Below, one piece after another: positions 10,941-49,960 of a DNA stretch of 64,000 nt (position 1 is the stretch's first letter; the number at the start of each line of letters is the position of its first letter). Under the pieces are notes generated by a model. That model did no database searches. It was not told the DNA's origin and was given only the letters and a program-made list of their open reading frames with translations. The stretch covers positions 1 through 64,000 of the IMG/VR virus record IMGVR_UViG_3300043446_005562; one strand, given 5' to 3'. The translations under genes and the position numbers were made by a program.

Positions 10941-11162
10941 ATGAAAATCCAGAAAAATACCAAGGCTCCAACCGAGGCCCAGCTCATTGAGCTTGCAAAA
11001 CGCATGCTAGAGCTCTCCACCAAATTTCCCAACAACTACGACCTTGGCGAAAGGGTTCGCAGCCTTCACGAGCTTGCGGTTTCCAACCCCGATCTGCTGA
11101 TAAATAACCAGAAAGACCGCGACACAGATGAGTCGAATAAAACCATTCTTGGCCCACATTAA
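10941..11162 (+). CDS. hypothetical protein (73 aa)
   Basis: FPNNYDLGERVR motif seen in small phage proteins. Confidence 0.65.
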   Translation: MKIQKNTKAPTEAQLIELAKRMLELSTKFPNNYDLGERVRSLHELAVSNPDLLINNQKDRDTDESNKTILGPH

Positions 11163-11763
11163 CGAGAACGATAAGTTCAACCGCCTTAAACAACTGGGCC
11201 TCTCCCAAAACGACACCCCGCAGGAAACTTTCAGCCAGCTATCCGAGGTATTTCAAAATGATCCGCAGCTGAGCTCACTCTTCCAGCAGATCGATGCCCG
11301 CGTTGAAGAGCTCTTTGCTCCAATTCTGGCAAGAGCGGACGAGGAGTCGGATGAATGGCAGGAAATCATGGACGACATGGGCTGGAGCTGGGCCGAGGAT
11401 GCTGGGAACTACTGGATCTGGAACGCGATCTCTGGCTTTGGAGAAGGTGGCGGCATGTACGAATCAGAGGAACACCCAGAGCGTGAGCGCAATGTTGAAA
11501 GATTAAGAGGGCTAGGCCTTGCACCCAAAAAGGAATTCGATGAGCGTTGGGAAGAGATGATGGATGAATGGGGCTCGGATCCCGATATTGATAGGGCAAT
11601 CACAACGCTCAAGGCCAAGACCAACGAGATCATCGACAAGCACATTGACCTAGACGATTATGAGGACGAAGGTGAATGGAATGAGCGTGTTGATTGGATG
11701 TATCAAGCTAGCATTGACGATCTCGGCTTTTTTGAGTACATGGTTGCATCAGGCTCGCTATAA
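11128..11763 (+). CDS. acidic putative virion internal protein
   Basis: N-terminal MSRIKPFLAHINE leader; RLKQLGL and RLRGLGL motifs. Confidence 0.75.
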   Translation: MSRIKPFLAHINENDKFNRLKQLGLSQNDTPQETFSQLSEVFQNDPQLSSLFQQIDARVEELFAPILARADEESDEWQEIMDDMGWSWAEDAGNYWIWNAISGFGEGGGMYESEEHPERERNVERLRGLGLAPKKEFDERWEEMMDEWGSDPDIDRAITTLKAKTNEIIDKHIDLDDYEDEGEWNERVDWMYQASIDDLGFFEYMVASGSL

Positions 11764-11795
11764 TATAAATAATAAGACAAAAATATAAACAAAAA

Positions 11796-12581
11796 ATGAA
11801 ACACACAATCATTAAAGATTTTAAAGGCTGGAACCGCCTGTTTGAAGCTGAAACAGCCGGTACGGCTGGCTCAGCCGGGGTTGCCGGTACAACCGGTACA
11901 GCTGGTACTTCCGGTACTGCCGGTACCGCAGCCGCTGCTCCGCTAACCGCAATCACAGGTGCGGACGGAGCCCTAACCGCTGACGATATTAAAAAGGTGC
12001 AGGCTGTTGTCTACAATGCACCTCTCACCGACACCAAATCATGTGACGGTAAAGTTGGGCCAAACACCATTGCTAAAATCAAGGAGTTTAGAACCGCTAA
12101 CTCAATCACAGACGAAACGCTTGAGCCAACTCAAACCACAATCGGGCCAAAAACCCTTGCCAAAATTGCCGAAAAGATCGCGGCAGGCTTTACGCCCGGC
12201 GCAGCTGCAGGTTCAGCCGGCACTGCAGGTACCGCAGGCACTGTGTTTGATCAACGTAATCAAAACGACGACAAAATTGCAATGGGCATCTGCGATCAGA
12301 TCGTTGCAAAATTCAAGGAAACCGAGTTTTGGAAACCATTTAAGGGTACCTTTAACGATGATGAGTCTGCGGCCGGTATGGCCTACAACAACTGGTACAC
12401 GACCACGATCGTACCGTTGGTTAAGACGCTTAGAGCGGGCGACCCCAACATTGCAAAGCTGGAGGCGGCTGACAAATCGACCCGTGCAAAACTACAGGGC
12501 GGAACCGCAAACGATACTTCATCTTGGAGCATTGATACGCTAAACGGGCCGATGCAGTACACGGTCAACACCGACTTCTAA
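11796..12581 (+). CDS. putative virion protein with AGTAG low-complexity linkers and a peptidoglycan-binding-like segment
   Basis: MKHTIIKDFKGWNRLFE leader; CDGKVGPNT...IGPKTL. Confidence 0.75.
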   Translation: MKHTIIKDFKGWNRLFEAETAGTAGSAGVAGTTGTAGTSGTAGTAAAAPLTAITGADGALTADDIKKVQAVVYNAPLTDTKSCDGKVGPNTIAKIKEFRTANSITDETLEPTQTTIGPKTLAKIAEKIAAGFTPGAAAGSAGTAGTAGTVFDQRNQNDDKIAMGICDQIVAKFKETEFWKPFKGTFNDDESAAGMAYNNWYTTTIVPLVKTLRAGDPNIAKLEAADKSTRAKLQGGTANDTSSWSIDTLNGPMQYTVNTDF

Positions 12582-12605: not shown

Positions 12606-14390
12606 ATGAAGCACTCAATCATAAAGGATTTCAAGGGCTGGAACCGTTTAATCGAGTCAACCCAATACATGCGGGAGGCGGCTGATCCAAACACGCCAAT
12701 TGAAACTCTGTTACAGCAGACCGATCTTGAGGGTCTATACCAAAGAATTCTCACCAGCGATGATGCGAATACCAAGGCTCTACCCAACTACGCAGCCATC
12801 ATTGAATGGTGGCACCAGGGCGGACCGGACCTTAACCTATGGAAGACTATTTTCAAGGCGGGCGGCGAGGCCAAGCGTGACAAACAGAATTCAGCCAAGA
12901 GCATGTACTATTGGTTGGGAGGTTTTGCCAAACAAGGCACAGCGGCGACCAGCGCAAGCCAATACAATTACGTCAAGAACGTTGAGGACTTTTGTACTGC
13001 AATAAAGCAGTTTGCACCAAGCATCTCAGCATCAGTTGCAAAGTTCACAAAACCGGCCGAACAAAAACGCTATGAGGGCTGGAAGGATGCGGCTCAAAAG
13101 GCGGATGCAGTACTTGCCCTAATCGCTCAGGTGAAGGCCAAGGGTCTCAATCTAAGTCAACAGTCCGCTAGACTGCTCATACCTGCGGTTGCGGTAGACG
13201 GTTCATTTACAATCTCTCAGCAACGAGTACCTTTTGCAACCTATTTTAAGGAGGTTGACGATGCATTTAAGAAGGGTTCAGATGATGGTATTACAACTAA
13301 TTCTTATGCCTTTAGCTCAGGTAATTGGCAGATTGGCGGCAATACAACCCCACTACAGACGATTCAACAGAACGTCCAAACTTTGACCTCAGCAATGGGG
13401 GATCAGACAAAGTTAAGCCAATACTTTTCAGCAAATAACACCCTAGGCTTTGAGGAAAAGAAGACCATCGCGGACTACATTAATCAACGGGTTCAAAAAT
13501 ACGTTGACCGAAAAAATTCAAATCCAAAACCTGGTCAGGCACAAGTCGATGCGGCGACCGCTATTAAAACGGCGACCGATCTCTATATTGTGCCAGCCGG
13601 CACAAGCCTAACCCTGCCGCCTGAGACAATTCAGCCTAGTCCAGAACCAATTATTATTAACGGTTCATACCCAGAAAATCCAAATGGAGATTGGGCCTCT
13701 GCTGCAATGAACAAAGCAAAACAGTTCTTCGGCGACGATAAGATTCAAATAGAAGCACCCGCACTACAAGAGATGACAACTGGTATTAAAACCTATCTGG
13801 ATCAAATCAAGGCAGACGGCGCCCAAATCACAGGAGTTAAGATCTCCGGTATTTCAAGCACAAGCCGCGTACCAAGTTCCTACGATCCGGGCTCAAAGAC
13901 AGCCAATCCTGCTTCGGGTTATACTGAAGCGCATAACGTGCCCCTAGCTCAAGATCGATTGGCCTCAATTAAGGCTGCGATGAAACAGGTTTTTGCCCAA
14001 AATGGAGTTGCTGATAATCTAATAACTGAAGATACTGCTAGCGATGTTGTAAATGCAAACGCTGGCGATGCATGGACCGATGCAGATAAGACCAAATTCG
14101 CGAATCGCAAACAGCCGGGCCAAGAAGCCCTAATGAAGGAATATGAGGACAAATTCGGTAAATACAAGTACGCCTTTGCCAGATTTGAAATTACCTATAC
14201 CCTGCTAAAACCTGTACAAAAGACCTTTCAAGCGGACCCAATTCCTAACTCTAAGTGGAAAGTTTTCATTAGCTGGAGAGACGAAACCTGGCAACCTCCA
14301 AAAATTGACATACCGCACATCGGTATTGGACCTGGGCCAAGCAAACCGCCAAAGACCAAGGGCAATCCGATGCAGTGTCCAGTTTTTTAA
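12606..14390 (+). CDS. large putative virion protein (594 aa), possible OmpA-C-like segment
   Basis: Leader paralogous to preceding gene (MKHSIIKDFKGWNRLIE); ISGISSTSRVP...LAQDRLASIK. Confidence 0.7.
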   Translation: MKHSIIKDFKGWNRLIESTQYMREAADPNTPIETLLQQTDLEGLYQRILTSDDANTKALPNYAAIIEWWHQGGPDLNLWKTIFKAGGEAKRDKQNSAKSMYYWLGGFAKQGTAATSASQYNYVKNVEDFCTAIKQFAPSISASVAKFTKPAEQKRYEGWKDAAQKADAVLALIAQVKAKGLNLSQQSARLLIPAVAVDGSFTISQQRVPFATYFKEVDDAFKKGSDDGITTNSYAFSSGNWQIGGNTTPLQTIQQNVQTLTSAMGDQTKLSQYFSANNTLGFEEKKTIADYINQRVQKYVDRKNSNPKPGQAQVDAATAIKTATDLYIVPAGTSLTLPPETIQPSPEPIIINGSYPENPNGDWASAAMNKAKQFFGDDKIQIEAPALQEMTTGIKTYLDQIKADGAQITGVKISGISSTSRVPSSYDPGSKTANPASGYTEAHNVPLAQDRLASIKAAMKQVFAQNGVADNLITEDTASDVVNANAGDAWTDADKTKFANRKQPGQEALMKEYEDKFGKYKYAFARFEITYTLLKPVQKTFQADPIPNSKWKVFISWRDETWQPPKIDIPHIGIGPGPSKPPKTKGNPMQCPVF

Positions 14391-14996: not shown

Positions 14997-15659
14997 ATGA
15001 AAACTTTTAAAATCTGGTTAGTACTTCTAATCGTAATTATCCTGGGTACATCATTTTCGCTGGTTCAACTGCCGAAACCCCCGATCGTTATCCTAAAACA
15101 TGCCGGCTACGTATCTCACTATAATACAACCCTAAAATATCCGGTCGAGGTTGAGTGGTGGGCAACCAAATCTCGACTCGTATGTCCAGACACAAAGGTT
15201 CCACGAAAGGACGAGTTTGCACAGGATCCACTCTTACCCAATGAAACTGATTTAGCTGACGACTATAAAGGTTCAGGCTTTGATAGAGGCCACATGTGCC
15301 CGGCCGCCGACAACCAGTGTAATGCGGACTGGCAACGCGAGTGCTTTTATTTCTCAAATATGTCTCCACAGTATCATTCGCTAAATGCTGGAGTCTGGAA
15401 AACTCTTGAGGTTAGAACCAGAGAACTTGCCTCCCAACTAGACTCGGTTAGAGTTTGGTGCGGTAATGTGGGTAACGTTGCTAAAATTGGAGAGGTCGCA
15501 GTTCCTTCTAAATGTTGGAAAGTGATTTACATAAAGAAAACCAAAGTTTGGGAAGCCTATATCTTTGAGAACACAAAGGATCAAACAAAAAAGCTTGATC
15601 AGCTCGCGGTTAAGGTATCAGACGTTGAAAAATTAACCGGCTTTAAATTTAAACCATGA
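14997..15659 (+). CDS. DNA/RNA non-specific endonuclease (NucA/EndoG family) with N-terminal membrane/signal segment
   Basis: GFDRGHMCPAAD, FYFSNMSPQ, LNAGVWKTLE, VPSKCWKVI. Confidence 0.92.
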   Translation: MKTFKIWLVLLIVIILGTSFSLVQLPKPPIVILKHAGYVSHYNTTLKYPVEVEWWATKSRLVCPDTKVPRKDEFAQDPLLPNETDLADDYKGSGFDRGHMCPAADNQCNADWQRECFYFSNMSPQYHSLNAGVWKTLEVRTRELASQLDSVRVWCGNVGNVAKIGEVAVPSKCWKVIYIKKTKVWEAYIFENTKDQTKKLDQLAVKVSDVEKLTGFKFKP

Positions 15660-16063
15660 AACACCTAAAGCAGTTCTCACAATTCATAAGTGAATCACTA
15701 GATCACAATCAGCTCGTTGAGCTTGAAAAGTACGCGGACGGGCTGTTCAGCGAACTTGGCCTCGATGTAGTATTCACCAAACACTTTAAGGATAGAATCA
15801 ATGATGTTCGCAACGGCAAGCCAATAACCTATAACGAACTTAAAGTCCTCTTTCTAAAGGCATACCTAAATGCGGGCCAAAAAATATCCGAGCTTCCTGC
15901 TGAGACTGAAGCGGTACTAAAGGACTTAAGCTCAAATCTTAACGCCCCGTTCAAGATCCAGGGCGCACCCGATGATGCTGGCCACACCGAACACGACATG
16001 ATAATGAAGACTATTATGAAGAAATCGGGATTCATGTCGACCAACCCAGCGATCGTCGTTTAA
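15656..16063 (+). CDS. conserved T4-like phage protein, possible RelE/BECR-fold nuclease
   Basis: MKHLKQFSQFISE leader; DVVFTKHFKDRIND...IMKTIMKK. Confidence 0.6.
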   Translation: MKHLKQFSQFISESLDHNQLVELEKYADGLFSELGLDVVFTKHFKDRINDVRNGKPITYNELKVLFLKAYLNAGQKISELPAETEAVLKDLSSNLNAPFKIQGAPDDAGHTEHDMIMKTIMKKSGFMSTNPAIVV

Positions 16064-16135: not shown

Positions 16136-16702
16136 TTACATTTCGTTTTCAGTGTTTGCGCCCTTTTTCTGAAATCCAAAAGGCTTTGACTGCTTGGCAG
16201 CAGGTTTTTCTGCTTTTTTACCGAAAGGCATTCCTTTTGCAGCAGGTTTTTCTGCTTTTTTACCGAAAGGCATTTCTTTTGCAGCCGGCTTGGCTTTACC
16301 TCCTTTTTTAGGAGCCTCTTCCATCTCTTCCTCTTCTTCAGGCATTGCCTTCTTTTTACCAACCGGTTTTAGGTTAGCGAATTTTTTGTCAACCGCCTTA
16401 AGAGCTTCAATCTGAGCCTTTTTCTTTGCTTCATAAAGCTCATGTGGATCTAGGTGAATTTCCCTAGGCGGAGCGGCTAAATAATTATCAGGATCAGCTT
16501 TATGCTGTCTGTCGTAGTGAGAATATGAATCATCTTGATCAGCGTATTCGCCGCACTCTGTGCAATATCCATCAGTATCAATATCAGAATCACAGCATGG
16601 TGACTTCTCCATTGACATAGAGTCTTCCATGTCGCTTAAGTGATGATTATGCGAGTGATACTCATTAACGAAATCTGTAAATCTTTTTACTTGGTGTTTC
16701 AT
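16136..16702 (-). CDS. putative virion protein with CxxC motifs and a Lys/Pro/Ala-rich tail
   Basis: MKHQVKRFTDFVNE leader; CCDS..YCTECGE; KPAAKxMPFGKKAE repeats. Confidence 0.75.
   Translation of the reverse strand: MKHQVKRFTDFVNEYHSHNHHLSDMEDSMSMEKSPCCDSDIDTDGYCTECGEYADQDDSYSHYDRQHKADPDNYLAAPPREIHLDPHELYEAKKKAQIEALKAVDKKFANLKPVGKKKAMPEEEEEMEEAPKKGGKAKPAAKEMPFGKKAEKPAAKGMPFGKKAEKPAAKQSKPFGFQKKGANTENEM
16197..16284. repeat. 42-bp in-frame tandem repeat (two units plus partial)
   Basis: GCAGCAGGTTTTTCTGCTTTTTTACCGAAAGGCATT(C/T)CTTTT at 16197 and 16239. Confidence 0.9.
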
Positions 16703-16723
16703 TTTTAGTTTTTCTTTTTTTGA

Positions 16724-17164
16724 TTAGGGTTCGATATCTTCATCCCCTTCAGCATTCTCAACGTCAGCTGAAAGACCCAGCATTTCGTCATTGAATTTAT
16801 TGAAAGCGGATTCAGCATCCTTCATTGTTTTATTAAGTGCAATAAGTTCATCCTTTAGGGTTTGAACCTTTTGCTTGTCCTCATCCGATGTAGGATTCTT
16901 ACGAGAGTCCTCAGGCATTTCTAAAAATTCCTTCTGCTTTTCTTTGAATGCTTTAACCGCATCCTTGCGAGCCTGATCTAATTTTTTAAATTTACCAATT
17001 TCGGTTGAATCATCGATTTCCTCAACGCTCTTTGGTTCTGTCTCGTCCATTTCAGCTGGAGGAGCCGGTGCGGCAGAAGGGTCAGCGGCTGGGGCGTCTA
17101 TTGCTGGAACAGTCGCGTCAACCTTTTCAGATTCTTCAAGCCATTGATTATACCTGTAAATCAT
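16724..17164 (-). CDS. acidic coiled-coil protein, possible prohead core component
   Basis: MIYRYNQWLEE leader; ATAAATA upstream. Confidence 0.7.
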   Translation of the reverse strand: MIYRYNQWLEESEKVDATVPAIDAPAADPSAAPAPPAEMDETEPKSVEEIDDSTEIGKFKKLDQARKDAVKAFKEKQKEFLEMPEDSRKNPTSDEDKQKVQTLKDELIALNKTMKDAESAFNKFNDEMLGLSADVENAEGDEDIEP

Positions 17165-17221
17165 TTCTTAGTTAACTATTTTAGTTTATTTATCTGCGGC
17201 CCTTGAATAAATAACTCTATA

Positions 17222-17998
17222 ATGAAACTATTACAATTTAGTACGTGGTTGACTGAGAATTCCCGACCCCTAATCAAGTTAAGTGATTTGGACATTAACC
17301 GAAAGTATAAGCATGAAAGATACGAATATGAGCTCTTTCCAATGTTTAGAAGACTTAAGACCCGAATCAACGAACTTGATAAGATGCCGACTCTTGAGCA
17401 ATGGTTTGCGATGATGCAGAATTCGGATGCCCAGTTCTACACTCTTGTGCAGACTGCGCAGTTGGGTCAGCCAGACGTTAGGGAGCTCTTTAGGGACCTA
17501 ACCGGCCGACGTGCTGCAAAAATGGCAAAGTACAATCTGGAAGAGAGCGCCGATCAGGTTGCGGCATTTCAAAGCAAACTAGATCCTGCGTGGACCGTGA
17601 TTGTGCTGTGGCCGACTGACTCCGGCTATGCTGAACTCTCCAAAGTATTTGATCATCTGGGCATTGCATTCGGCGATCTGCTAAACCAGACAATATACGT
17701 CGATGGAGTTCAGCTTGAGGAGGCCAACCTAACACAGGATCACCTGCTTGCGATTGAGGCCCATGAAATTGCGCACGGCATTCTAGAGCACGCCTCATCC
17801 AATCGTGACTTTGCAGAATACGATGAACGTCAAGAACGTGAAGCTGACTGGTTAGGGATTAGAATTTTGGATGAACTCGGTCATCAGACCGCAGCCCAAA
17901 TCCTAGAAGATCGTTATCTGGATCACTATTCAGAAAGTTCAGAGGATCTGGTTGGGACTGAAAAATTAGAGTCTGCACTACAGAGATATTTTAAATAA
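17222..17998 (+). CDS. HExxH zinc metallopeptidase-like protein
   Basis: IEAHEIAHGILEH...EREADWLGIRIL; MKLLQFSTWLTE leader. Confidence 0.75.
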   Translation: MKLLQFSTWLTENSRPLIKLSDLDINRKYKHERYEYELFPMFRRLKTRINELDKMPTLEQWFAMMQNSDAQFYTLVQTAQLGQPDVRELFRDLTGRRAAKMAKYNLEESADQVAAFQSKLDPAWTVIVLWPTDSGYAELSKVFDHLGIAFGDLLNQTIYVDGVQLEEANLTQDHLLAIEAHEIAHGILEHASSNRDFAEYDERQEREADWLGIRILDELGHQTAAQILEDRYLDHYSESSEDLVGTEKLESALQRYFK

Positions 17999-18328: not shown

Positions 18329-19387
18329 ATGAAAACTTTTTCTCAATTCATAAATGAAAATTCTCAGCCTTCACATTACACTGATGTGATCTCTAAATTC
18401 GCGGATGGAATGCGTAGAGCAGGATATCACGCAGATATTTCGGTGGAACCTAATGGTTTAATTAAGATTGACTCTAATTGGGAACTTGATACAATGAAGA
18501 TTAGCGGACTTGGTCGAGTTGAGCCCAGCTCCTATTTTACGATGGTGCTGCAGCCCAACTTTACTAAACAGGCTCCAGAAAAGCTGACAAGACTGATTCA
18601 ATTGGGCTTAGGCACAGCTGCCTCTCTGCTTGAAGGATTTACAATAACGACCTCCTTACTCGTTGAAGTCTATGAGGTTGAGGGCTATGAATACGCTGAG
18701 GGTCCAGACACCGACTCTCATTCCCTAAAAGATTTGGGCATTGATCATTATTTTGAGAATGGAGACATTGAGGGAGCCGGTGAATCTTTCATGGAGTGGT
18801 GGGACGAAGCTGGCAATGAATACGCCTATATGCTCTACACCAGCGTTGCGGAAGATCTGGAAGAATACGTTGCAACTCATCAATCCGATGAAGACGATGA
18901 CGAAGAGGAAGAGGAGGAAGATGATGAAGACGATAATATGTTTGAATCATATCATGACAAGTTTAGACGGCTTCACCAATTAGGTCTTGCTGAACCTCAG
19001 ATTAACATTCAAACCCTGGATGGAGATGAAAGTTGGGCCGGCGATCAGGCCAGACAACTATCAATTGAAGCAAAAGAGTGGTCCGATTCAAAGGGCCGTC
19101 AAATTGTCAGAATCGAAGGTCAACTAGGTAGCGAAGTTGCAATGCTGTTAATTGAGTTAAGCGATGGCTCAATCATTCAACTTGATAACTTCTACCATAT
19201 TGGTCCTGGAAGTTCAGCTCGAGATTACTGCAGACTCTTCATTAAGTCAGAGCGTGGCGAATTTGATATTGATGTAAAGAAGGAAGGCCGCGAAGTATAC
19301 TCAGACGATGATCTGTGGATGTACATGCTTGAGCAAACTGGTTCAATCCTCAGATCCGTAATGACGATTGCTAAACCATATCTTTAA
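18329..19387 (+). CDS. two-module acidic putative virion internal protein
   Basis: MKTFSQFINE leader; poly-D/E linker; second leader-like NMFESYHDKFRRLHQLGL. Confidence 0.75.
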   Translation: MKTFSQFINENSQPSHYTDVISKFADGMRRAGYHADISVEPNGLIKIDSNWELDTMKISGLGRVEPSSYFTMVLQPNFTKQAPEKLTRLIQLGLGTAASLLEGFTITTSLLVEVYEVEGYEYAEGPDTDSHSLKDLGIDHYFENGDIEGAGESFMEWWDEAGNEYAYMLYTSVAEDLEEYVATHQSDEDDDEEEEEEDDEDDNMFESYHDKFRRLHQLGLAEPQINIQTLDGDESWAGDQARQLSIEAKEWSDSKGRQIVRIEGQLGSEVAMLLIELSDGSIIQLDNFYHIGPGSSARDYCRLFIKSERGEFDIDVKKEGREVYSDDDLWMYMLEQTGSILRSVMTIAKPYL

Positions 19388-20543: not shown

Positions 20544-20559
20544 ACTCTTAATAATATAC

Positions 20560-24757: not shown

Positions 24758-25132
24758 ATGTTTAAGAAATTTGATGAATTTAATGAAACCTTGAATGAAG
24801 GTTTTTGGGACTGGCTGACCGGCAAATCCGAAAAGGGAGAAAAGAAGGAAAAGTCAACGAGCGCAAAAGAGGGTCCAATCGATTCACAAGTTGAAGCCTA
24901 CTACAAAACGCTGCAAGATTTTGCGGACTCAAATAAATCAATTGAGGTCCAAGCGGCCGGTAGTATGGAATATTCTAAGCTGGTTGAAGACATTCAGCTT
25001 GCGCTGGAATTTTTGGGTTATAAACTTACTAAATACGGAGTCGATGGTTATTTTGGACCAGAAACGGCCGAAGCAATCGTTAAATTTAATGAGGACACCC
25101 TAAAGAAAATACCCGATAGCCAACATGATTAA
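24758..25132 (+). CDS. peptidoglycan-binding domain protein
   Basis: IQLALEFLGY...GVDGYFGPETAEAI; MFKKFDEFNETLNE leader. Confidence 0.8.
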   Translation: MFKKFDEFNETLNEGFWDWLTGKSEKGEKKEKSTSAKEGPIDSQVEAYYKTLQDFADSNKSIEVQAAGSMEYSKLVEDIQLALEFLGYKLTKYGVDGYFGPETAEAIVKFNEDTLKKIPDSQHD

Positions 25133-43190: not shown

Positions 43191-44342
43191 TTATTTTCCA
43201 GTAGTAACAGTTCCGCCAGTCGGTGCGGCTAAAGGAGCAGCTGTTGTTGTATTAGTCGTCTCACCAGGTGCAGATTGAGTCACGGTAGCAGAGGTTGCTC
43301 CTTCTGGCTTGTTAATGTAGATGAAGCCGCCTTGACCGGAAGTTCCGCCTGTTCCGCCTGTTCCACCGGTACCGCTTGTGCCTGAACTACCGGACGTACC
43401 TTTGCCTGAAAGATCCCAAAGCTGTTTTAGTCGATCTAGGGTAATTCCTACTTTTTTACAGAATTTTGCAAGATAGGTAGTATCTGCTTCAGTCACAGCA
43501 TTGTGTTCTGCATCCTTACCGTCAAAGAACATTCCAAAGGCAACCGCTGTATTTGCACCGAAATCGCCGTCTGCTGCTCCAAGCTTATCCTGAACCTTTT
43601 TTGCAGGATCACCGTATCTGTCAACGAATACTTTTTCTTTAAGAATTAACTGTGCAAATTTTACCTCTCTGGCCTTGGTGCCTCTATTGACCTTGGTACC
43701 ACTAACTGTACCATTGGTCATGGAAAGAAGTTTTTCCTGTAGAAATTGAAGTATTGCATCCGGGCTGTCCAACTTGACATCATTCCAATCCCATGGATAG
43801 GTACCGCTGGTACCACTTTGACCACCTGAGCCTGAATTGTCCTGAACTTTAACCTCCTCACTCTTGTCCTTTACTGGCTGTGTGCCCATTTTTTGAGCGT
43901 CCTTTACGTCATAAAGTTTAAGCTTGCCGTCTTTGCTTGTTAATATCGGTTGGGCTTTAGTCGTATCAAAGTCCTTTGCATTCCTAACTGATAAAATTCC
44001 CTTGAATATGTGTTGCCCGGTTAATTTTCTTTCGCGGTCTTTTGTTACCGCAATGAATACGATATTTTGACCGACAGCGTTCATTACTGTGCTACTTGCC
44101 GCAAGCTGATTGGCTGCTTCTTGCTTGGCTAGATTTTCGTCTTCGGTTTCCATTTTCATTACAAAATGAAATGCTGCGATTTCTCCAGAGTTAGTGTCAG
44201 GCTTATCGGTATCAACTTTAAATTTTTGGTCTGGTGTTAGAAATGAGAACAGAGCCTCATTTATTGGCATTGTGCCCTTTTCTCCAGTAGTTTTTCCGTA
44301 ACTTTCATTAACGAAGTCATCAAATGATTTGAAACTTTTCAT
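43191..44342 (-). CDS. putative virion protein with GTSG linkers and PG-binding-like segment
   Basis: MKSFKSFDDFVNE leader; VKFAQLIL...ADGDFGANT. Confidence 0.7.
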   Translation of the reverse strand: MKSFKSFDDFVNESYGKTTGEKGTMPINEALFSFLTPDQKFKVDTDKPDTNSGEIAAFHFVMKMETEDENLAKQEAANQLAASSTVMNAVGQNIVFIAVTKDRERKLTGQHIFKGILSVRNAKDFDTTKAQPILTSKDGKLKLYDVKDAQKMGTQPVKDKSEEVKVQDNSGSGGQSGTSGTYPWDWNDVKLDSPDAILQFLQEKLLSMTNGTVSGTKVNRGTKAREVKFAQLILKEKVFVDRYGDPAKKVQDKLGAADGDFGANTAVAFGMFFDGKDAEHNAVTEADTTYLAKFCKKVGITLDRLKQLWDLSGKGTSGSSGTSGTGGTGGTGGTSGQGGFIYINKPEGATSATVTQSAPGETTNTTTAAPLAAPTGGTVTTGK

Positions 44343-44449: not shown

Positions 44450-45574
44450 ATGAAATATCTATTTGAATTTGCTCAGTATTCGTCAACTGGTTCGACCGAG
44501 TCCTCATTTGGTGTGCTTGGTGATTTGGGCAAAGACTCAAAGTTTGGCGAGCAGACCGGCTATTTCAAGAGCCTAATGCAGGAGGCCCAGGCCAGGGGAA
44601 TGGATGCGTTTGTCTTTACCGAATTTAGCCCAACCGGCGTGACTGCCTGGCAACTAAACGGCGATGATTGGGCCGAGTCTACTCGAGCAATACCTGGAGT
44701 ATTTTACGATCGAAGTTTCCGAAAAAAGAATGGAGCTGGCAAAACCTCAAATACTCGGGCCCTGTGCTCGCTTGGCTCAACTCCAATCAATTCACCGGAT
44801 TTTAGAAAACTTGCGCTCGACAAACACCTGATGTACGAGAATCTTAAGAATCACGAAATTGACGGCATGGGCTTGCCACATACTCAAAAGTTTAGTGAGG
44901 ACTCGACCATTGGCTTTTTAGAAAAGTGGCCGACTGCCATTTTAAAACCCAGGTTTGGGTCAGGCGGTCAAGGCATCATAAAGATCGCAAAGACCGGCAC
45001 CGATTATTCTCTTAACTACAAGGATCATTCATTAAGCTGTCAGGCTCATGAATTGAAAAACAAGATCAATGAGATTCGTCAAAAGATGAATTCCGATAAG
45101 CGACTCTATATTATTCAGGAGTGCATTGACCTGCCCAAATACAATAACGGGGTTTTTGACGTTAGGGTGATTTATCAGAAAGGCAAGGGTGGCAGCCCGC
45201 TTAGAACGGGCATGGCGGTCAGGCTCGCAGCACCAAATAAAGTAACAGCAAATCTGCACCAAGGCGGCAGCAGAGAAACTCTTGGCACAGTATTGGGCGA
45301 GCTGTTCAATCAGGACATGAACGGCCAGATAGCTGAGTCGATTCGCAAATACTCAAAACAGATATTTGAAATTCTAGACGATCGAGTTGGTCCAATTGGC
45401 GAAGTCGGTATTGACTTTTTGATTGATCAAACTGGCAAGGTGCACCTTATTGAGGTTAATTCCGTGCCCGGCCGAAATCTATTTCATATTTTGCCGGACA
45501 TTCGCCAGACCGCAATAAAGAGACCTGTTGAATACGCACAACACCTACTTGAAAAACAAAAAAAGTCGCACTAG
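44450..45574 (+). CDS. ATP-grasp ligase, YheC/YheD-like
   Basis: DKHLMY, ILKPRFGSGGQGI, IIQECI, FDVRV, NLHQGG, GIDFLID, IEVNSVPG. Confidence 0.88.
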   Translation: MKYLFEFAQYSSTGSTESSFGVLGDLGKDSKFGEQTGYFKSLMQEAQARGMDAFVFTEFSPTGVTAWQLNGDDWAESTRAIPGVFYDRSFRKKNGAGKTSNTRALCSLGSTPINSPDFRKLALDKHLMYENLKNHEIDGMGLPHTQKFSEDSTIGFLEKWPTAILKPRFGSGGQGIIKIAKTGTDYSLNYKDHSLSCQAHELKNKINEIRQKMNSDKRLYIIQECIDLPKYNNGVFDVRVIYQKGKGGSPLRTGMAVRLAAPNKVTANLHQGGSRETLGTVLGELFNQDMNGQIAESIRKYSKQIFEILDDRVGPIGEVGIDFLIDQTGKVHLIEVNSVPGRNLFHILPDIRQTAIKRPVEYAQHLLEKQKKSH

Positions 45575-46213: not shown

Positions 46214-46693
46214 TTAACGAAGTCTATCTAAAATTATTCGTTGAGATGCTGCAACATTTGCATAGGCCTGATCAATATCAACAAAACCGGCCCAATCCAA
46301 CTCTTCCTCTTGTAGATTCTGCTTTGGCACTCGAAGTCCATCGAGACCAATTTCCGCTGGATCAGATATTCTACACACAAGATAATGAATGTTATTTCTG
46401 AACTTTTTACCGCTCCAAACCTCAGCAGTTTGAATTGCCGGCTCTACCTGATCGGGTCTAATTTTTAATCCGGTCTCTTCAAAAGTTTCCCGGAAAGCGG
46501 CCGCCTCCGGCGATTCGCCCTCTTCCATTTTACCCTTGGGAATTCCCATTACGGGCTTGACCCAGCTTGAATTGGTTGGATGAACCAGCAAAATCATTTT
46601 TTTACCAGTGTCGACTTGAGTATAGACAATTGCAATGCCAGCTGAATCGCTTCTCTTTTTTGGAGCCGCGAAATTTTCAAAATCTTTAATCAT
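46214..46693 (-). CDS. Nudix hydrolase
   Basis: GKMEEGESPEAAAFRETFEETG Nudix box. Confidence 0.93.
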   Translation of the reverse strand: MIKDFENFAAPKKRSDSAGIAIVYTQVDTGKKMILLVHPTNSSWVKPVMGIPKGKMEEGESPEAAAFRETFEETGLKIRPDQVEPAIQTAEVWSGKKFRNNIHYLVCRISDPAEIGLDGLRVPKQNLQEEELDWAGFVDIDQAYANVAASQRIILDRLR

Positions 46694-46883: not shown

Positions 46884-46886
46884 AAT

Positions 46887-47618
46887 TTATAAAATGTATG
46901 GACACTTTTTCAAAACTTCTTCTCTATTAATATACTCATTTAGATAGGTTTTGAGCATGTTATTTTGGACTTTGTGCTTGTACCATGCAGGCAACTTTCC
47001 AAGATAGGATTCATGAATTTTAAAATAGAGATTTACAAGTTCAGGTCGGTTTAACCTAAAGTTTTCCATTGCAAGCAGCACAGGTGCTTCCTCATCCAGA
47101 CCCAATCTAAATCTCATGAATTCTGAATCCAGCTTTGAGTGTAGAGTCTCGGTCAAATTGACCAATTGTTCGCGATAAGGTAGTCTGGTTAGATCTAAAT
47201 ACACGGGCTTACCGTCTATGATTTGACGAGCTCCAAATATTTGACCGTTGTGGGCCGCAATCTGCACCTGATTTTCAAATTTTGGTTTGGTAAAATACAG
47301 GGAACCCTTTTGAATTGGCGTAACGTTTAAGTGCCTGAAGGTCGGATAGGTTTTTATCTCAGACATTGGCGATACCACCGTGATAGGTGTTTTAAGTTTT
47401 CTTGCTCCAAATTTGCCAGTTGTGGAATTTGGAATGAATGCTGAGCCGGCAAGTCTATTGAAAACTTGATACGTTGAAAATTGATTTGGAATAATAGTTA
47501 ACAGTATCTCAGAATCCTGATCTCCATACAGATCCGGCATGTCATGATTTTCGCCGATCAGGCCAATTTTTTTAGAGTAGGTATCGTATACCTGAAAATC
47601 GTCAAACCTTTTTAGCAT
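46887..47618 (-). CDS. hypothetical protein, possibly a degenerate ATP-grasp fold
   Basis: AFIPNSTT...LKTPI and a spacing of later motifs reminiscent of ATP-grasp, but catalytic residues are not evident. Confidence 0.5.
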   Translation of the reverse strand: MLKRFDDFQVYDTYSKKIGLIGENHDMPDLYGDQDSEILLTIIPNQFSTYQVFNRLAGSAFIPNSTTGKFGARKLKTPITVVSPMSEIKTYPTFRHLNVTPIQKGSLYFTKPKFENQVQIAAHNGQIFGARQIIDGKPVYLDLTRLPYREQLVNLTETLHSKLDSEFMRFRLGLDEEAPVLLAMENFRLNRPELVNLYFKIHESYLGKLPAWYKHKVQNNMLKTYLNEYINREEVLKKCPYIL

Positions 47619-49960
47619 TAGCGTAGTGTTGATAATTTTCCTATTCTAAAAAATGACTCTTTAATTATATCGGTTGTCTGCAATTCATTTGGCAATTGAT
47701 TGGTTTCCCAAAGATGCAAAGTTTCGGTCTTTAATTGAGTCTTGTCGTCAGCTTTAATTTTGCCAGCCTTTTCAAGATCTTCAAGCACCTTGTCTATTCT
47801 AGACTGACTAGATTCGTTTGGCGAATAGGTTTTTAGATCATCGTCCCATATATCTGAAAAATAGGCTTTAACTCGTGGGCTCTGCTCAGATAATGGGTGT
47901 TGAGCATCAATGTTTGCATCTTGGCCTAGCTGCTTGAGAATTCCCTTTGTGTATTCGTTTAAGCCAGACTCTTCCCATTCCTTTTCCGTTCTTAAATCAG
48001 TTTGTCTGCGGTGTGGATCAATACCCTTTGGCATTTTTATCACGCAGCCAGTCGCTGCTTCAGCAACAGTCGCCTCACCAATACATGGATTTATTGATTT
48101 GGTTTTTTCAACTAATTTTGCCTTGGCCTCTTTTCCAGCATTCACCTGTTTCATTAATTCAGAGTAGCCTTCTGGGTTTGAGGTTTTGAATTTTTCAAGA
48201 TCATCGGGTGTAATATCAAGGCTTGTCTCTTCGTCTTTTTCAAAAACTATCTTGTTTAAAATTTGCTTGGTCTCCTTGATATTCAGAGAGACTGCACTCA
48301 TTGTGCCAGCCGCAGTTGCTTTAACCTTGTCCAAAGCTTCGTCTGGCGTACCGTTTACGAGGTACTTGGCACAATCACTACCTTTCAAAAAGGCTTTGAT
48401 TATGAAAACAATAAAGGCGCGACCGCTAATTCCACGATACGCCATTTTTCCCGTGAATTTGGCAAGATCCGCCTGTATTTTACCTAAATTTTGAGTGCTC
48501 TTTATTAAGAGCTCAGGGGATTCCTTGAATATTGCGGCAGTTTTAGCAACATTTGGAGATATTAACTTGCTAACAGCCGGATTCGTGATTACTTCATCCA
48601 TTAATTTGGAAACCGCTGCACTATCACCGGCTTTGATTGCATCGGCTAGTGCCTTATCTCCAAGTTTTGAACCTGATTTTCCAAGTTCAGCAATTAATTC
48701 TGGAGATTTTAGCAATTCATTTAGGCTCTTACCTGTTATTTGGCCTTCTTTTGCTAAAATATTACCAACAAGCTTTTCGGTCATTGCACCTTGAATGTAC
48801 ATTTTCTGGATTGAATCGGACGCGCCGTTTTTCATAATTGCTTTGAACCCATCTGACGTAATTATCTCAGCCTGCATTGCTTTATTGAAGCCTGGAATGT
48901 CTGCGAATTTTGCACCAATTTTTTCAGCATCTGCTGTTGCAATGCCGGCCGCCTTTGCTGCATCAGTTGATGCAATTGCAGCCTTTTCGCCGCTTGCAAC
49001 AAGCTTGGCGTCCTCTTTCATCAAGAGCTCTCCAGCCTCAGTTGCGCCTTTACCAAAGCTTGTCATTTTTAGAGCAAGCTCATCGATCCATTTAATAAGA
49101 CCGGTTGGTTTTGGGATGAGACCAAATGATACTTTATTGATTGCAAATCCAATAAATTCAGCAATTCCCTTGATTACCTTAAGAGCAGCGGTCGCAATAA
49201 ATTCGCCAATACCCTTTAAGGCTTTACCCATCGTTTCAATGATTCCGCCTGATGCCTTTGCTCCGGCTTCAATCTCCAGTGCGCCAGTTTTAAAAGCCAT
49301 GGTCTCAGCTTTGATTGCAGCACTTTCTCCCTTCCAGATAACGGCGAATAACTTTTCGCTAATTTTAGCAAAAGGCTTAATGATTCCCTTTAGGGCTCCA
49401 CCGATTACTTGACCTGTACCTGGAATTGCAACGACTAGATTAAGGCAGCCCATTAGATAATTTCCACGATAAAAAGAGATTGCAGCATTTAATAAATTGG
49501 CAACAGTATCAACTGGAATACCTGCCCAAGAAAAAGGAATAAGACCAATAATATCAAGCACAAATTGTAGGATTCCAATCGCAGATCCGCCCTCAGTCAT
49601 CATCGAGACAAAGTTCTTAACTGCATCTAGCAAACCCTCATTTATTGACTGTAGATTGTTAAGCGTATCAAGATAAGCTCCCTCCAGAGTCAAGAACACT
49701 GGATTATAACCGTGCTTGATTAAGTAATTTTCAGTTGCATTGATTTCATCAATTGTATCAAATGATTCTAGCAGTCCAAGTTGATGATCTAGGATCGCTG
49801 CTGCCTCCTGTTGGGTTGCAGGCTCATATTGGGTTAAGGTTAGAGAATCAAGATTTTGCCACATTTCGGCCGGAACGGCCATAATGGTTTCGCGTATTGA
49901 AGCTAGTTGAGAATCTTTGTCATAATTAAAGAATTCTTCAGCAGAAGATACATATTTCAT
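47618..49960 (-). CDS. large putative virion protein with pre-toxin TG (PT-TG)-like domain
   Basis: LDIIGLIPFSWAGIPVDTVANLLNAAISFYRGNYLMGCLNLVVAIPG; late promoter. Confidence 0.65.
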   Translation of the reverse strand: MKYVSSAEEFFNYDKDSQLASIRETIMAVPAEMWQNLDSLTLTQYEPATQQEAAAILDHQLGLLESFDTIDEINATENYLIKHGYNPVFLTLEGAYLDTLNNLQSINEGLLDAVKNFVSMMTEGGSAIGILQFVLDIIGLIPFSWAGIPVDTVANLLNAAISFYRGNYLMGCLNLVVAIPGTGQVIGGALKGIIKPFAKISEKLFAVIWKGESAAIKAETMAFKTGALEIEAGAKASGGIIETMGKALKGIGEFIATAALKVIKGIAEFIGFAINKVSFGLIPKPTGLIKWIDELALKMTSFGKGATEAGELLMKEDAKLVASGEKAAIASTDAAKAAGIATADAEKIGAKFADIPGFNKAMQAEIITSDGFKAIMKNGASDSIQKMYIQGAMTEKLVGNILAKEGQITGKSLNELLKSPELIAELGKSGSKLGDKALADAIKAGDSAAVSKLMDEVITNPAVSKLISPNVAKTAAIFKESPELLIKSTQNLGKIQADLAKFTGKMAYRGISGRAFIVFIIKAFLKGSDCAKYLVNGTPDEALDKVKATAAGTMSAVSLNIKETKQILNKIVFEKDEETSLDITPDDLEKFKTSNPEGYSELMKQVNAGKEAKAKLVEKTKSINPCIGEATVAEAATGCVIKMPKGIDPHRRQTDLRTEKEWEESGLNEYTKGILKQLGQDANIDAQHPLSEQSPRVKAYFSDIWDDDLKTYSPNESSQSRIDKVLEDLEKAGKIKADDKTQLKTETLHLWETNQLPNELQTTDIIKESFFRIGKLSTLR

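What the first reader, a model, noticed from the sequence alone, without database searches (positions are those of the whole stretch)
11128..49960. About 20 proteins, including enzymes, share a T4 capsid-targeting-like N-terminus and late promoters
Seen: leaders of the form MK-x(1-4)-F-x-x-F-x(1-4)-(N/F/L)E on genes starting at 11128, 11796, 12606, 15656, 16702, 17164, 17222, 18329, 21943, 24758, 25125, 26374, 27929, 32265, 33131, 43162 and 44342, with truncated forms at 44450, 46693 and 47618. Most follow ATAAATA. Known: T4 internal proteins use MKTYQEFIAE to enter the head and are cleaved after (I/L)xE. Inference: a large injected toolkit (GNAT-like, nucleotidyltransferase, metallopeptidase, possible RNase, wall hydrolases) acts before any phage gene is expressed.
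Basis: partly seen in the sequence, partly recalled or inferred. Interest (0 to 1): 0.7.

Follow-up and report, generated by a model that had tools for sequence, protein, structure and literature searches.

The report
Capsid-targeting leaders on thirty phage proteins
A 253-kb freshwater jumbo phage puts the short N-terminal peptide that phage T4 uses to load proteins into its head on about 30 unrelated late proteins, several of them enzymes, so it probably delivers a large protein toolkit together with its DNA.

Summary
All 20 listed genes start as described, and an unbiased comparison of N-termini recovers the same family. Genome-wide there are 17 canonical and about 38 candidate leader genes, where chance predicts fewer than one canonical case.

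The consensus is K-x-F-x-x-F-[LIV]-x-E. It matches T4 IPII/IPIII (MKTYQEFIAE) in the same register and ends in the T4 prohead-protease site [LIV]xE.

The genome encodes a gp21-family (S77) protease fused to a scaffold, a gp55-type late sigma factor, and an ATAAATAA late promoter that heads every unit containing a leader gene. The mature proteins are unrelated to each other. Selection acts on the peptide, not on the DNA.

In one cargo family (a nucleotidyltransferase), 54 of 56 homologs have E directly before the conserved mature start.

In the cultured cyanophage S-CREM2, the enzymes found in virions by published mass spectrometry carry this same leader.

Confirmed cargo domains are VanY plus a lysozyme-like domain, CHAP, peptidoglycan-binding domains, a pol-beta nucleotidyltransferase, a gluzincin-like metallopeptidase, an ATP-grasp ligase and a NUDIX hydrolase. 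GNAT and RNase were not found.

This is a T4-type capsid-targeting system expanded about tenfold. Packaging is well supported. Injection and early action are inferred.

The parts
11128..11763 (+). Leader gene, degenerate form MSRIKPFLAHINE|N. 211 aa, very acidic (net -31), no known domain.
   Evidence: Leader kept in the G001 ortholog as MSKIKPFLKHINE|S. ATAAATA at 11100.
11796..12581 (+). Leader gene, gapped form MKHTIIKDFKGWNRLFE|A. Gly/Thr/Ala collagen-like repeats; a peptidoglycan-binding-like segment was seen by eye only.
   Evidence: ATAAATA at 11765.
12606..14390 (+). Leader gene, gapped form MKHSIIKDFKGWNRLIE|S. 594 aa, no known domain. Co-transcribed with 11796.
15656..16063 (+). Canonical leader MKHLKQFSQFISE|S. 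135 aa; matches phrog_23027 (function unknown).
16136..16702 (-). Canonical leader MKHQVKRFTDFVNE|Y. 188 aa, Lys/Ala-rich repeats.
16724..17164 (-). Canonical leader MIYRYNQWLEE|S. 146 aa, acidic, coiled-coil-like.
   Evidence: ATAAATA (minus strand) at 17187.
17222..17998 (+). Canonical leader MKLLQFSTWLTE|N on a two-domain protein whose C-terminal domain is a gluzincin-type Zn metallopeptidase (HEIAH..H, QEREADW).
   Evidence: Weak Pfam M78 hit. In 25 homologs M1, W9 and E12 are invariant and the HExxH motif is conserved. AF2 model pLDDT 78; best folds are minigluzincins and M48 peptidases. ATAAATA at 17207.
18329..19387 (+). Best-scoring leader MKTFSQFINE|N. 352 aa, net charge -46, no known domain.
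   Evidence: In 14 homologs down to 26% identity, M1 K2 F4 Q6 F7 I8 N9 E10 are invariant..
21943..23937 (+). Canonical leader MINSFIQMVNE|S. 664 aa, no known domain.
   Evidence: ATAAATA at 21917.
24758..25132 (+). Gapped leader MFKKFDEFNETLNE|G on a small PG_binding_1 protein.
   Evidence: Pfam PF01471, E 2.8e-6. PHROG endolysin-type hits. ATAAATA at 24707.
25125..26372 (+). Gapped leader MIKGFDQFAGKLNE|A on a two-domain wall hydrolase: VanY/M15 peptidase plus a lysozyme/chitinase-like domain.
   Evidence: Pfam VanY, E 4e-13. phrog_181 endolysin, E 4.9e-22, on residues 206-356.
26374..27288 (+). Degenerate leader MKYLIEYRLFE|S. 304 aa, no known domain.
   Evidence: Ortholog starts MKHLLEYKIFE|S.
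27285..27929 (-). Canonical leader MKFIKDFKGFLNE|S on a CHAP-domain wall hydrolase.
   Evidence: Pfam CHAP, E 2.8e-9.. ATAAATA (minus strand) at 27951.
31198..32265 (-). TTG-initiated gapped leader MKNIKSFTDFTDINE|MGGW on a pol-beta-fold nucleotidyltransferase.
   Evidence: G67 S68 D86 D88 D154 are invariant in 51 sequences. AF2 pLDDT 93, with a detached leader helix and a disordered linker at residues 14-17. Folds found: Pol beta/lambda, cGAS, CD-NTases. E precedes GGW in 54 of 56 homologs. ATAAATA (minus strand) at 32287.
33131..33586 (+). Gapped leader MKRHVQGFESFERIYE|Y. 151 aa, no known domain.
   Evidence: ATAAATA at 33097.
41456..43162 (-). Degenerate leader MRNINITNYALLNE|N. 568 aa with long Ala/Gly-rich hydrophobic stretches; possibly a membrane-active ejection protein (inference).
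   Evidence: Ortholog starts MRHINIGNYAILNE|S.
43191..44342 (-). Canonical leader MKSFKSFDDFVNE|S. 383 aa; Gly/Ser/Thr repeats and a peptidoglycan-binding-like segment, both seen by eye only.
   Evidence: ATAAATA (minus strand) at 44388.
44450..45574 (+). Short form MKYLFE|F on a YheC/D-type ATP-grasp ligase. About 20 aa of N-terminal extension is conserved in 46 homologs. Whether it is a capsid-targeting sequence (CTS) is uncertain.
   Evidence: Pfam PF14398, E 1.5e-55. The extension is absent from the distant homolog P0211. ATAAATA at 44434.
46214..46693 (-). Truncated form MIKDFENF with no [LIV]xE, on a NUDIX hydrolase. If targeted, it is probably not cleaved. Weak member.
   Evidence: Pfam NUDIX, E 1.8e-13..
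46887..47618 (-). Truncated or gapped form MLKRFDDFQVYDTYSKKIGLIGE|N. 243 aa, no known domain.
47618..49960 (-). Weak candidate MKYVSSAEEFFNY...SIRE|T. 780 aa with hydrophobic Gly/Ala-rich segments. It heads the late unit that contains 47618 and 46693.
   Evidence: ATAAATA (minus strand) at 49981.
17187..17213 (.). Divergent pair of late-promoter motifs (ATAAATA on each strand) between leader genes 17164 (-) and 17222 (+). It is an example of the (A/G)ATAAATAA motif that heads every leader-gene unit.

Best explanation
The leaders are T4-type capsid-targeting sequences (CTS).

Proposed pathway:
1. The genes are transcribed late from (A/G)ATAAATAA promoters read by a gp55-type sigma factor.
2. 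The 10-20-residue N-terminal peptide forms a short amphipathic helix with two aromatic residues three apart. This helix docks the protein onto the scaffold core while the prohead is built.
3. The gp21-family (S77) prohead protease, here fused to the scaffold, cuts after the Glu of [LIV]-x-E. This releases the mature protein inside the head.
4. The cargo then leaves through the tail with the DNA at the next infection.

About 30 unrelated proteins use this address, roughly 12% of the coding capacity. They include wall hydrolases, peptidoglycan-binding proteins, a nucleotidyltransferase, a metallopeptidase and probably an ATP-grasp ligase and a NUDIX hydrolase.

Shown here: the shared leader, its T4 register, the protease, scaffold, sigma factor and promoter, purifying selection on the peptide, and the E| junction in cargo families.

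Shown elsewhere: in T4 this leader is sufficient for packaging, and the virion enzymes of the cyanophage S-CREM2 carry this same leader.

Inferred: packaging and cleavage in this particular phage, ejection, and early action in the host.
For: 1. The register is identical to T4 IPII/IPIII (MKTYQEFIAE|A). T4 IPI (MKTFKEFTSTTTPVSTITE|A) is a gapped form like 11796 and 25125. Both were read from NC_000866.

2. Enrichment at N-termini is 17 found vs 0.3-0.5 expected, and the family is recovered without any prior motif.

3. The 38 mature parts share no similarity at E<1e-3, so the leader is a module and not shared ancestry.

4. Synonymous sites in the leader vary freely: third-position identity is 0.51. 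Between G000 and G001 orthologs, identity is 84% in the leader, 70% in the next 15 residues and 66% in the rest. [LIV]xE is kept while x changes.

5. The machinery is present: Peptidase_S77 at E 2.6e-10 and phrog_207 at E 3.9e-38, in frame with a coiled-coil scaffold; a gp23-like capsid protein with a conserved SLNE|A/S site; and a gp55-like sigma factor at E 1.6e-18.

6. ATAAATA lies within 80 nt upstream of 22 of 38 leader genes vs 32 of 245 others (p 7e-9). All 38 lie in units headed by it, vs 128 of 245 others. The same motif precedes the sheath, tube and baseplate wedge genes.

7. In the nucleotidyltransferase family, 54 of 56 N-terminal extensions end in E directly before the conserved GGW, with L/I/V at -3 from GGW. 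About 17 multidomain relatives have [LIVT]xE|GG[WL] in front of the internal domain. In the AF2 model the leader is a detached helix joined by a disordered linker at the junction.

8. The exact leader MKxFxQFINE occurs at 119 or more places in IMG/VR (the viral-contig collection). 118 of 122 matches are at the first ATG of an ORF, on 39 unrelated protein clusters. 7 of 9 large contigs carrying it encode S77.

9. In S-CREM2, published virion mass spectrometry (PMC10665884) lists a SAM hydrolase, a kinase and a cytidylyltransferase. Their N-termini are MKDFDSFLEE, (V)KRFDAFLTE and MKNFSSFLTE. ORF12, ORF13 and ORF15 are leader-like.

10. A leaderless PG_binding_1+GH19 endolysin candidate exists elsewhere in the genome, so the leader-bearing wall hydrolases are extra copies.
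Against: There are no virion data for this uncultured phage.

The protease-substrate complex prediction gave no answer.

The cultured or named phages closest by capsid protein (Tenacibaculum PTm1 and pT24, Prevotella Lak-C1) show no such leader family, so the system is patchy and cannot be transferred by kinship.

Three 'truncated' members and several degenerate ones do not meet the full motif.

A few strong motif matches are internal, for example residues 105-113 of the gene at 156331-156975.

Head-packaged wall hydrolases are unusual for T4-like phages.

The S-CREM2 authors themselves note that abundant non-structural proteins might co-purify with virions.

Ejection into the cell has not been shown for any non-T-even cargo.
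Confidence: 0.78

Rival explanations
1. The leaders do target the prohead, but many of the proteins are assembly components of an enlarged scaffold core, like T4 gp67/gp68. These would be degraded or retained in the head, rather than being effectors delivered to the host.
For: 159054-159413 lies directly beside the capsid gene and is small, basic and repetitive. Several leader proteins are low-complexity, acidic or coiled-coil with no enzyme domain. 25 of the 38 have no Pfam match below E 0.001. The T4 core proteins are also cut at [LIV]xE (PMC5694885).
Against: At least seven carry catalytic or wall-binding domains that have no role in assembly. The set turns over between G000 and G001 like accessory genes. 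In T4 the short MK..F..F leader marks the dispensable injected internal proteins, not gp67/gp68.
Confidence: 0.15
2. The shared N-terminus serves some other purpose: an export or sorting signal for the wall-active proteins, a chaperone or degradation tag, or a translation-initiation element.
For: Four to six of the proteins act on or bind peptidoglycan and must reach the periplasm. A second codon of AAA is common in highly expressed genes.
Against: The leader has no hydrophobic core and carries an acidic end. The same genome uses ordinary signal peptides and a T9SS sorting domain for its secreted proteins. Cytoplasmic-type enzymes carry the same leader. Synonymous sites are free, so it is not an RNA element. 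The identical peptide is an experimentally proven capsid address in T4 (PMC5694885, PMC12373910).
Confidence: 0.05
3. The resemblance is chance, or is left over from duplication of one ancestral gene.
For: 11796 and 12606 share 16 N-terminal residues and are adjacent, which suggests a local duplication of the 5' end.
Against: 17 canonical cases were found where fewer than 1 is expected. No similarity exists beyond residue 25 in any pair. The leader is the best-conserved part of otherwise divergent families.
Confidence: 0.02

Closest known systems
Phage T4 internal proteins IPI, IPII, IPIII and their capsid-targeting sequence (Mullaney and Black 1996, as cited in PMC5694885)
   Same: Same leader register (K x F/Y x x F [LIV] x E). 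Same [LIV]xE cleavage site. Same family of prohead protease. Late promoter of the TATAAATA type with a gp55-type sigma factor. The leader is shared by otherwise unrelated proteins.
   Different: T4 has three such proteins, all small inhibitors of restriction enzymes. This phage has about 30, up to 780 aa, including enzymes. The phage is very distant (capsid protein 25% identical) and probably infects Bacteroidota. The protease is fused to the scaffold.
Polymorphic Ip loci of T-even phages (Repoila et al. 1994; at least 10 Ip families recognised by the signal sequence, per PMC12373910)
   Same: Accessory genes recognised only by the shared leader. They are clustered and vary between related phages.
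   Different: That set is spread over many phages of one genus. Here a comparable or larger set sits in a single genome, and the cargo includes catalytic domains.
Virion-associated enzymes of T4-like cyanophages, e.g. S-CREM2 SAM hydrolase, kinase and cytidylyltransferase (PMC10665884)
   Same: Enzymes are detected in purified virions of a non-T-even T4-like phage. I find the same leader on them.
   Different: There are four to six such proteins per genome. That paper does not mention the leader or a targeting sequence. The enzyme types differ.
Ejection proteins of giant phages phiKZ, 201phi2-1 and SPN3US
   Same: Many internal head proteins are processed by a related protease after Glu and enter the cell with the DNA.
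   Different: The motif there is S/A/G-x-E or A-x-E. The propeptides are mostly longer than 100 residues and have no short common leader. In SPN3US, 8 of about 50 head proteins are processed (PMC5694885).
T7 gp16 and the P22 ejection proteins
   Same: They are a precedent for a wall-degrading or channel-forming protein that is stored in the head and ejected into the periplasm.
   Different: They have no cleavable short leader, a different assembly route, and belong to different phage families. This comparison rests on general knowledge and was not tested here.
Polyvalent injected proteins of phages (Iyer et al., cited in PMC7824862)
   Same: The nucleotidyltransferase domain found here also occurs inside 430-1650-aa multidomain proteins.
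   Different: Here each domain is a separate gene with its own leader. In the multidomain relatives the domain is preceded by [LIVT]xE, which suggests that they are cut into pieces.

Membership tests
T4-type CTS-bearing internal head proteins | N-terminal peptide of 10-20 residues resembling MKTYQEFIAE, shared by otherwise unrelated proteins | tested here: met
   The consensus is in the same register as T4 IPII/IPIII. The mature parts are unrelated to each other. The family is recovered without a prior motif.
T4-type CTS-bearing internal head proteins | Leader ends in the gp21 cleavage motif (L/I)-x-E | tested here: met
   All 28 aligned leaders have L, I or V at -2 and E at 0. The E| junction is conserved in the nucleotidyltransferase family. 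The three truncated forms fail this in part.
T4-type CTS-bearing internal head proteins | Genome encodes a gp21-family prohead protease and a scaffold core | tested here: met
   PF03420 at E 2.6e-10 and phrog_207 at E 3.9e-38, in frame with a 425-aa coiled-coil scaffold.
T4-type CTS-bearing internal head proteins | Late expression from a T4-type late promoter | tested here: met
   This holds at the sequence level only. (A/G)ATAAATAA heads all 38 units and also the structural genes, and a gp55-like sigma factor is present. No timed transcript data exist.
T4-type CTS-bearing internal head proteins | Physical presence in the head, removal of the leader, and ejection with the DNA | not testable with these tools
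   The phage is uncultured. The only indirect support is virion mass spectrometry of S-CREM2 proteins that carry the same leader.
phiKZ/SPN3US-type ejection proteins | Processing at S/A/G-x-E or A-x-E, with mostly long propeptides | tested here: not met
   Position -2 is L, I or V in 28 of 28 leaders, and the leaders are 6-20 residues long. The literature motif comes from PMC5694885.
Sec or lipoprotein signal peptides | Positively charged start followed by a hydrophobic core of 10 or more residues | tested here: not met
   The leaders contain 3-4 hydrophobic residues separated by polar ones and end in Glu. True signal peptides occur on other genes of the same genome.
Pol-beta superfamily nucleotidyltransferase (gene 31198-32265) | G[GS] motif, the DxD pair and a third acidic residue; alpha/beta palm fold | tested here: met
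   G67 S68 D86 D88 D154 are invariant in 51 sequences. AF2 pLDDT is 93, and Foldseek finds Pol beta/lambda, cGAS and CD-NTases at TM about 0.3. Substrate and product are unknown.
Gluzincin metallopeptidase (gene 17222-17998) | HExxH plus a downstream Glu ligand; metallopeptidase fold | tested here: inconclusive
   HEIAH and QEREADW are conserved. The Pfam M78 hit is below threshold. The best folds are minigluzincins and M48 peptidases, but only at E 0.1-0.5.

The most novel reading that the evidence does not exclude
The T4 capsid-targeting peptide may be a general, sequence-readable address label across the whole T4 superfamily, from coliphages to cyanophages, freshwater Bacteroidota phages and 636-kb huge phages. 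If so, the injected proteome of any such phage could be read from its genome.

This lineage has scaled the system up to about 30 cargo proteins, about 12% of its coding capacity. That would make the head a bulk protein-delivery device. It would bring in wall-degrading enzymes, a nucleotidyltransferase, a protease, a ligase and many strongly acidic proteins that may act against host defence before any phage gene is read.
Probability: 0.5. Interest if true: 0.78.

Novelty: new variant of a known kind. Interest (0 to 1): 0.62.

Why it matters
If the leader reliably marks packaged proteins, it gives a simple sequence rule for finding injected proteins in thousands of uncultured T4-like and huge phages. 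This class is currently known from only a handful of model phages and is rich in counter-defence functions.

The present genome is an extreme case, with about ten times the T4 number. It suggests that large capsids are used to carry enzymes as well as DNA.

The rule also explains why 'non-structural' enzymes keep turning up in cyanophage virion proteomes. Those papers report the enzymes without naming a mechanism.

The leader could also widen the T4 protein-packaging toolbox to other hosts.

Tried and rejected
1. Complex prediction of the protease domain (residues 1-240) with the leader protein 15656 gave 'no answer', score 0.00. It is not evidence either way.

2. A DNA search of 38-44 kb against GenBank phages found no match.

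3. Cultured phages related by capsid protein were checked. PTm1 (whole genome scanned), pT24 and Lak-C1 show no leader family. They therefore cannot serve as test systems.

4. The S-BM3 cyanophage homolog of the largest IMG/VR leader cluster lacks the leader.

5. GNAT and RNase domains among the leader genes were not found by Pfam or PHROGs.

6. PDB sequence searches of 31198, 17222 and 21943 found nothing. The protein atlas found nothing for 21943 and only unnamed viral clusters for 15656. tblastn of the nucleotidyltransferase against GenBank phages found no match.

7. River metatranscriptome contigs match the leader genes exactly. However, assembled contigs from RNA libraries cannot show timing or exclude DNA carry-over, so they are not used as evidence of late expression.

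8. Paralogy, chance and an RNA-level signal were tested and rejected.

Full report
WHAT THE WINDOW IS

The window is the first 64 kb of a single 252,618-bp virus record: 41% G+C, 93% complete by CheckV, and about 283 genes by a simple ORF call.

It is a T4-superfamily myovirus. Its major capsid protein matches phrog_138 and is 25% identical to T4 gp23. The best matches are huge phages from metagenomes (36%), Prevotella Lak megaphages (31%) and Tenacibaculum jumbo phages (30-32%).

The genome has a tail sheath, a baseplate wedge and a tube, 19 tRNAs and a gp55-type late sigma factor (phrog_234, E 1.6e-18).

It comes from freshwater lake and river metagenomes. A phage protein with a cohesin domain ends in a type IX secretion sorting domain. 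Together with the kinship of the capsid protein, this points to a Bacteroidota host. That host assignment is an inference.

CHECKING THE OBSERVATION

When the leaders are aligned on the Glu, the columns read:
- K at -8 (12 of 28)
- F or Y at -6 (20 of 28)
- F, W or Y at -3 (16 of 28)
- L, I or V at -2 (28 of 28)
- N at -1 (12 of 28)
- E at 0
- S, N, A or G at +1

A weight matrix built from the 17 ungapped cases finds them at N-termini, while the same score occurs at only 5-8 of 71,264 internal positions. That predicts 0.3-0.5 N-terminal cases by chance. 14 of the 17 still pass when left out of the matrix.

With no motif supplied, a BLOSUM comparison of all N-terminal 8-mers gives clusters of 19 and 5 genes. 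All of them are leader genes. The same procedure on phage PTm1 gives nothing.

Counting gapped and short forms, I list 38 candidates genome-wide. 21 of them lie in the window between 11 and 50 kb. Together they make up 10,619 residues.

Regex hits on thymidylate synthase, Fpg/Nei, DNA ligase and the capsid protein are chance matches and were dropped.

THE SAME LEADER IN T4

I read the T4 genes from NC_000866 rather than relying on memory. IPII and IPIII begin MKTYQEFIAE|A, and IPI begins MKTFKEFTSTTTPVSTITE|A.

The phage consensus has the same register as IPII/IPIII: K, aromatic two residues later, aromatic three after that, then [LIV]-x-E. The phage's gapped leaders (11796, 12606, 24758, 25125, 32265, 33131) resemble IPI.

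The literature held here states that all T4 internal head proteins reach the scaffold core through this capsid-targeting sequence, that gp21 removes it, and that it can package foreign proteins (PMC5694885; PMC3012670). At least ten Ip families in T-even phages were recognised by the signal sequence alone (PMC12373910).

THE MACHINERY IS PRESENT

A Peptidase_S77 domain (E 2.6e-10; phrog_207, E 3.9e-38) lies at genome 162804-163145. It starts at a TTG and runs without a stop into a 425-aa repetitive coiled-coil protein that looks like a scaffold.

The capsid protein has SLNE|A at residue 53. The relative G001 keeps SLNE but has an indel directly after it, as expected at a maturation cut.

THE PROMOTER

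ATAAATAA occurs 68 times in the genome, and 50 copies lie within 60 nt upstream of a gene start, mostly 24-33 nt before it. The extended consensus is (A/G)ATAAATAA followed by an A-rich stretch, close to T4's TATAAATA.

The motif precedes the sheath, tube and baseplate wedge genes.

It lies directly upstream of 22 of 38 leader genes, against 32 of 245 others (odds ratio 9.2, p 7e-9). All 38 leader genes lie in same-strand units headed by it, against 128 of 245 others (p 3e-10).

WHAT KIND OF SELECTION ACTS ON THE LEADER

No two of the 38 proteins resemble each other beyond residue 25, so the leader is a module and not shared ancestry.

Codons within the leader vary freely: third-position identity is 0.51 at identical residues, and codon use is like that of the whole genome. 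Selection is therefore on the peptide.

A 253,137-bp relative, G001 (capsid protein 81% identical), keeps the leader in nearly all orthologs. The middle residue of [LIV]xE changes (FLNE to FITE, FISE to FVNE, KLNE to KINE). Identity is 84% in the leader, 70% in the next 15 residues and 66% in the rest.

G001 also has leader genes that G000 lacks, so the set turns over.

In the family of gene 18329, M1 K2 F4 Q6 F7 I8 N9 E10 are invariant down to 26% overall identity. In the family of 17222, M1, W9 and E12 are invariant.

THE CLEAVAGE JUNCTION SEEN IN A CARGO FAMILY

Gene 31198-32265 has 180 relatives among 1.8 billion representative proteins. The conserved domain begins GGW..TQ.T.TP.

Of 56 relatives with an N-terminal extension, 54 have Glu as the last residue before GGW, with L, I or V three residues before the first Gly. 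The extensions are 6-34 residues long.

In about 17 multidomain relatives of 430-1650 aa, the internal copy of the domain is again preceded by [LIVT]xE.

The AlphaFold model (pLDDT 93.2) shows residues 7-14 as a separate low-confidence helix. Residues 14-17 are disordered, exactly at INE|MGGW.

This is what a removable address peptide should look like. It is the strongest internal evidence for the cut.

THE CARGO

Confirmed domains:
- PG_binding_1 (24758)
- VanY plus a lysozyme/chitinase-like domain (25125)
- CHAP (27929)
- YheC/D ATP-grasp (44450)
- NUDIX (46693)
- A pol-beta-fold nucleotidyltransferase (32265). The G-S and D-x-D-...-D residues are invariant, and the folds matched are Pol beta/lambda, cGAS and CD-NTases at low TM, so it has no close solved relative.

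Probable: a gluzincin metallopeptidase (17222). It has HExxH and a downstream EREADW, and its best folds are minigluzincins and M48 peptidases at weak E-values.

By eye only: peptidoglycan-binding-like segments in 11796 and 43191, long hydrophobic Ala/Gly-rich stretches in 41456 and 47618-49960, and a DxDG motif in the out-of-window gene 140126.

Twenty-five of the 38 have no Pfam match below E 0.001; two of these have weak matches above it. Several are extremely acidic.

No GNAT or RNase was found.

A normal endolysin candidate without a leader (PG_binding_1 plus GH19) exists at genome 236827-237657. The leader-bearing wall enzymes are therefore additional. The simplest role for them is local wall digestion at entry, as general knowledge holds for the T7 internal core protein gp16. 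That role is inference.

HOW WIDESPREAD THE LEADER IS

118 of 122 matches are at the first ATG of an ORF. The ORFs are 27-446 aa long and fall into 39 unrelated clusters.

Of nine large contigs among these, seven encode S77, six of them at E 1e-33 to 1e-40.

Two complete T4-like genomes of 160 and 214 kb carry only 2 and 4 leader genes. That is similar to T4's three. The roughly 30 here are therefore about a tenfold expansion.

The 636-kb huge phage LR756504 has at least seven canonical leaders at ORF starts.

LR756500 has one or two. Lak-C1, pT24 and PTm1 have none that I can detect.

EXPERIMENTAL SUPPORT FROM A CULTURED PHAGE

A leader-bearing IMG/VR family matches the 'cytidyltransferase' of cultured cyanomyoviruses from residue 1. 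P-SSM2 PSSM2_194 begins MKSFSQFLTE|T.

The S-CREM2 paper (PMC10665884) reports six non-structural proteins in purified virions by mass spectrometry. It remarks that kinases and cytidyltransferases are often found in cyanophage virions.

Reading their genes from OR473000 gives these N-termini:
- SAM hydrolase: MKDFDSFLEE|F
- Kinase: (V)KRFDAFLTE|E
- Cytidylyltransferase: MKNFSSFLTE|A
- Cas9-like nuclease: RFASFMAE|A at residues 18-25
- Virion proteins ORF13 and ORF15: MKDLHSFLTE|Q and MNFSEFNE|S

That paper does not mention an N-terminal signal.

So in a T4-like phage far from the T-evens, the proteins that carry this leader are the enzymes found in virions. The caveat is the authors' own: abundant proteins might co-purify with virions.

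VERDICT

This is a T4-type capsid-targeting and processing system, not a new mechanism.

Three things are new:
- the scale, about 30 proteins and about 12% of the coding capacity
- the enzymatic cargo
- the demonstration that the same peptide is used across very distant branches of the T4 superfamily

Packaging and cleavage in this phage are likely (0.78). Ejection and early action are plausible, but untested.

Noticed in passing
L004:5269-7251 (-), genome 161268-163250: The prohead protease (S77) and a 425-aa coiled-coil scaffold share one open frame with a TTG start. An ATAAATA motif lies 45 nt before the internal ATG of the scaffold part, which suggests nested expression like lambda C/Nu3. 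PTm1 has a gene annotated 'prohead core scaffolding protein and protease' of similar size.
   Followed up: partly
window 37755-39296 (-): A 513-aa phage protein has a tyrosinase central domain (Pfam PF00264, E 1.8e-25). This is an unusual enzyme for a phage.
   Followed up: no
window 14387-14944 (-) and 14997-15659 (+): A CAP-family protein and a DNA/RNA non-specific endonuclease (E 2.8e-41) lie among the leader genes. Both have ordinary signal or membrane-anchor N-termini. The endonuclease has the late promoter 13 nt upstream and heads the unit that contains leader gene 15656.
   Followed up: no
window 19533-20561 (-), 20613-21029 (-): A histone-deacetylase-family protein and an Hsp20 small heat-shock protein lie between leader genes on the opposite strand.
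   Followed up: no
L199:1673-3601 (+), genome 237672-239600: A phage protein has a signal peptide, a cohesin domain and a type IX secretion C-terminal sorting domain. It sits in a block of signal-peptide genes (237-247 kb). This points to a Bacteroidota host and to phage proteins displayed on the host surface.
   Followed up: partly
L004:332-976 (-), genome 156331-156975: A strong leader-like motif, ARYEEFVNE|NYG, sits at residues 105-113 of a 214-aa acidic protein next to the tail tube and head genes. It may be an internal cleavage site.
   Followed up: no
P0034, P0066, P0102, P0104 and others: In multidomain proteins of 430-1650 aa from other viruses, the nucleotidyltransferase domain is preceded by [LIVT]xE|GGW. 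It looks as if these polyproteins are cut into pieces by a gp21-type protease.
   Followed up: partly
window 18329-19387, 11128-11763; genome 190802-191587, 226743-227396: Several leader proteins are extremely acidic (net charge -46, -31, -34, -28). DNA mimicry against restriction or other defence is a possible role.
   Followed up: no
window 17162-17164: Contigs from three river metatranscriptome libraries that match genes 16136-17164 exactly all end within 2 nt of the start codon at 17164. One of them runs into adapter sequence there. This may be a transcript end or an assembly break in the AT-rich divergent promoter region.
   Followed up: no
P0245, P0246 (alignment A3): Two relatives of gene 17222 keep the leader and the first 110 residues but carry an unrelated C-terminal domain in place of the metallopeptidase. 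This is a domain swap behind a constant targeting and N-terminal module.
   Followed up: no
L202 and L201 (S-CREM2, OR473000): The enzymes reported as virion-associated in S-CREM2 carry the T4-type leader. This link is not made in the paper that reported them.
   Followed up: yes
window 2581-3300 (-): A second sigma factor, of the sigma-70 type (phrog_351, E 8.5e-46), lies in the block of small minus-strand genes at the left end. That block is probably the early or middle region.
   Followed up: no
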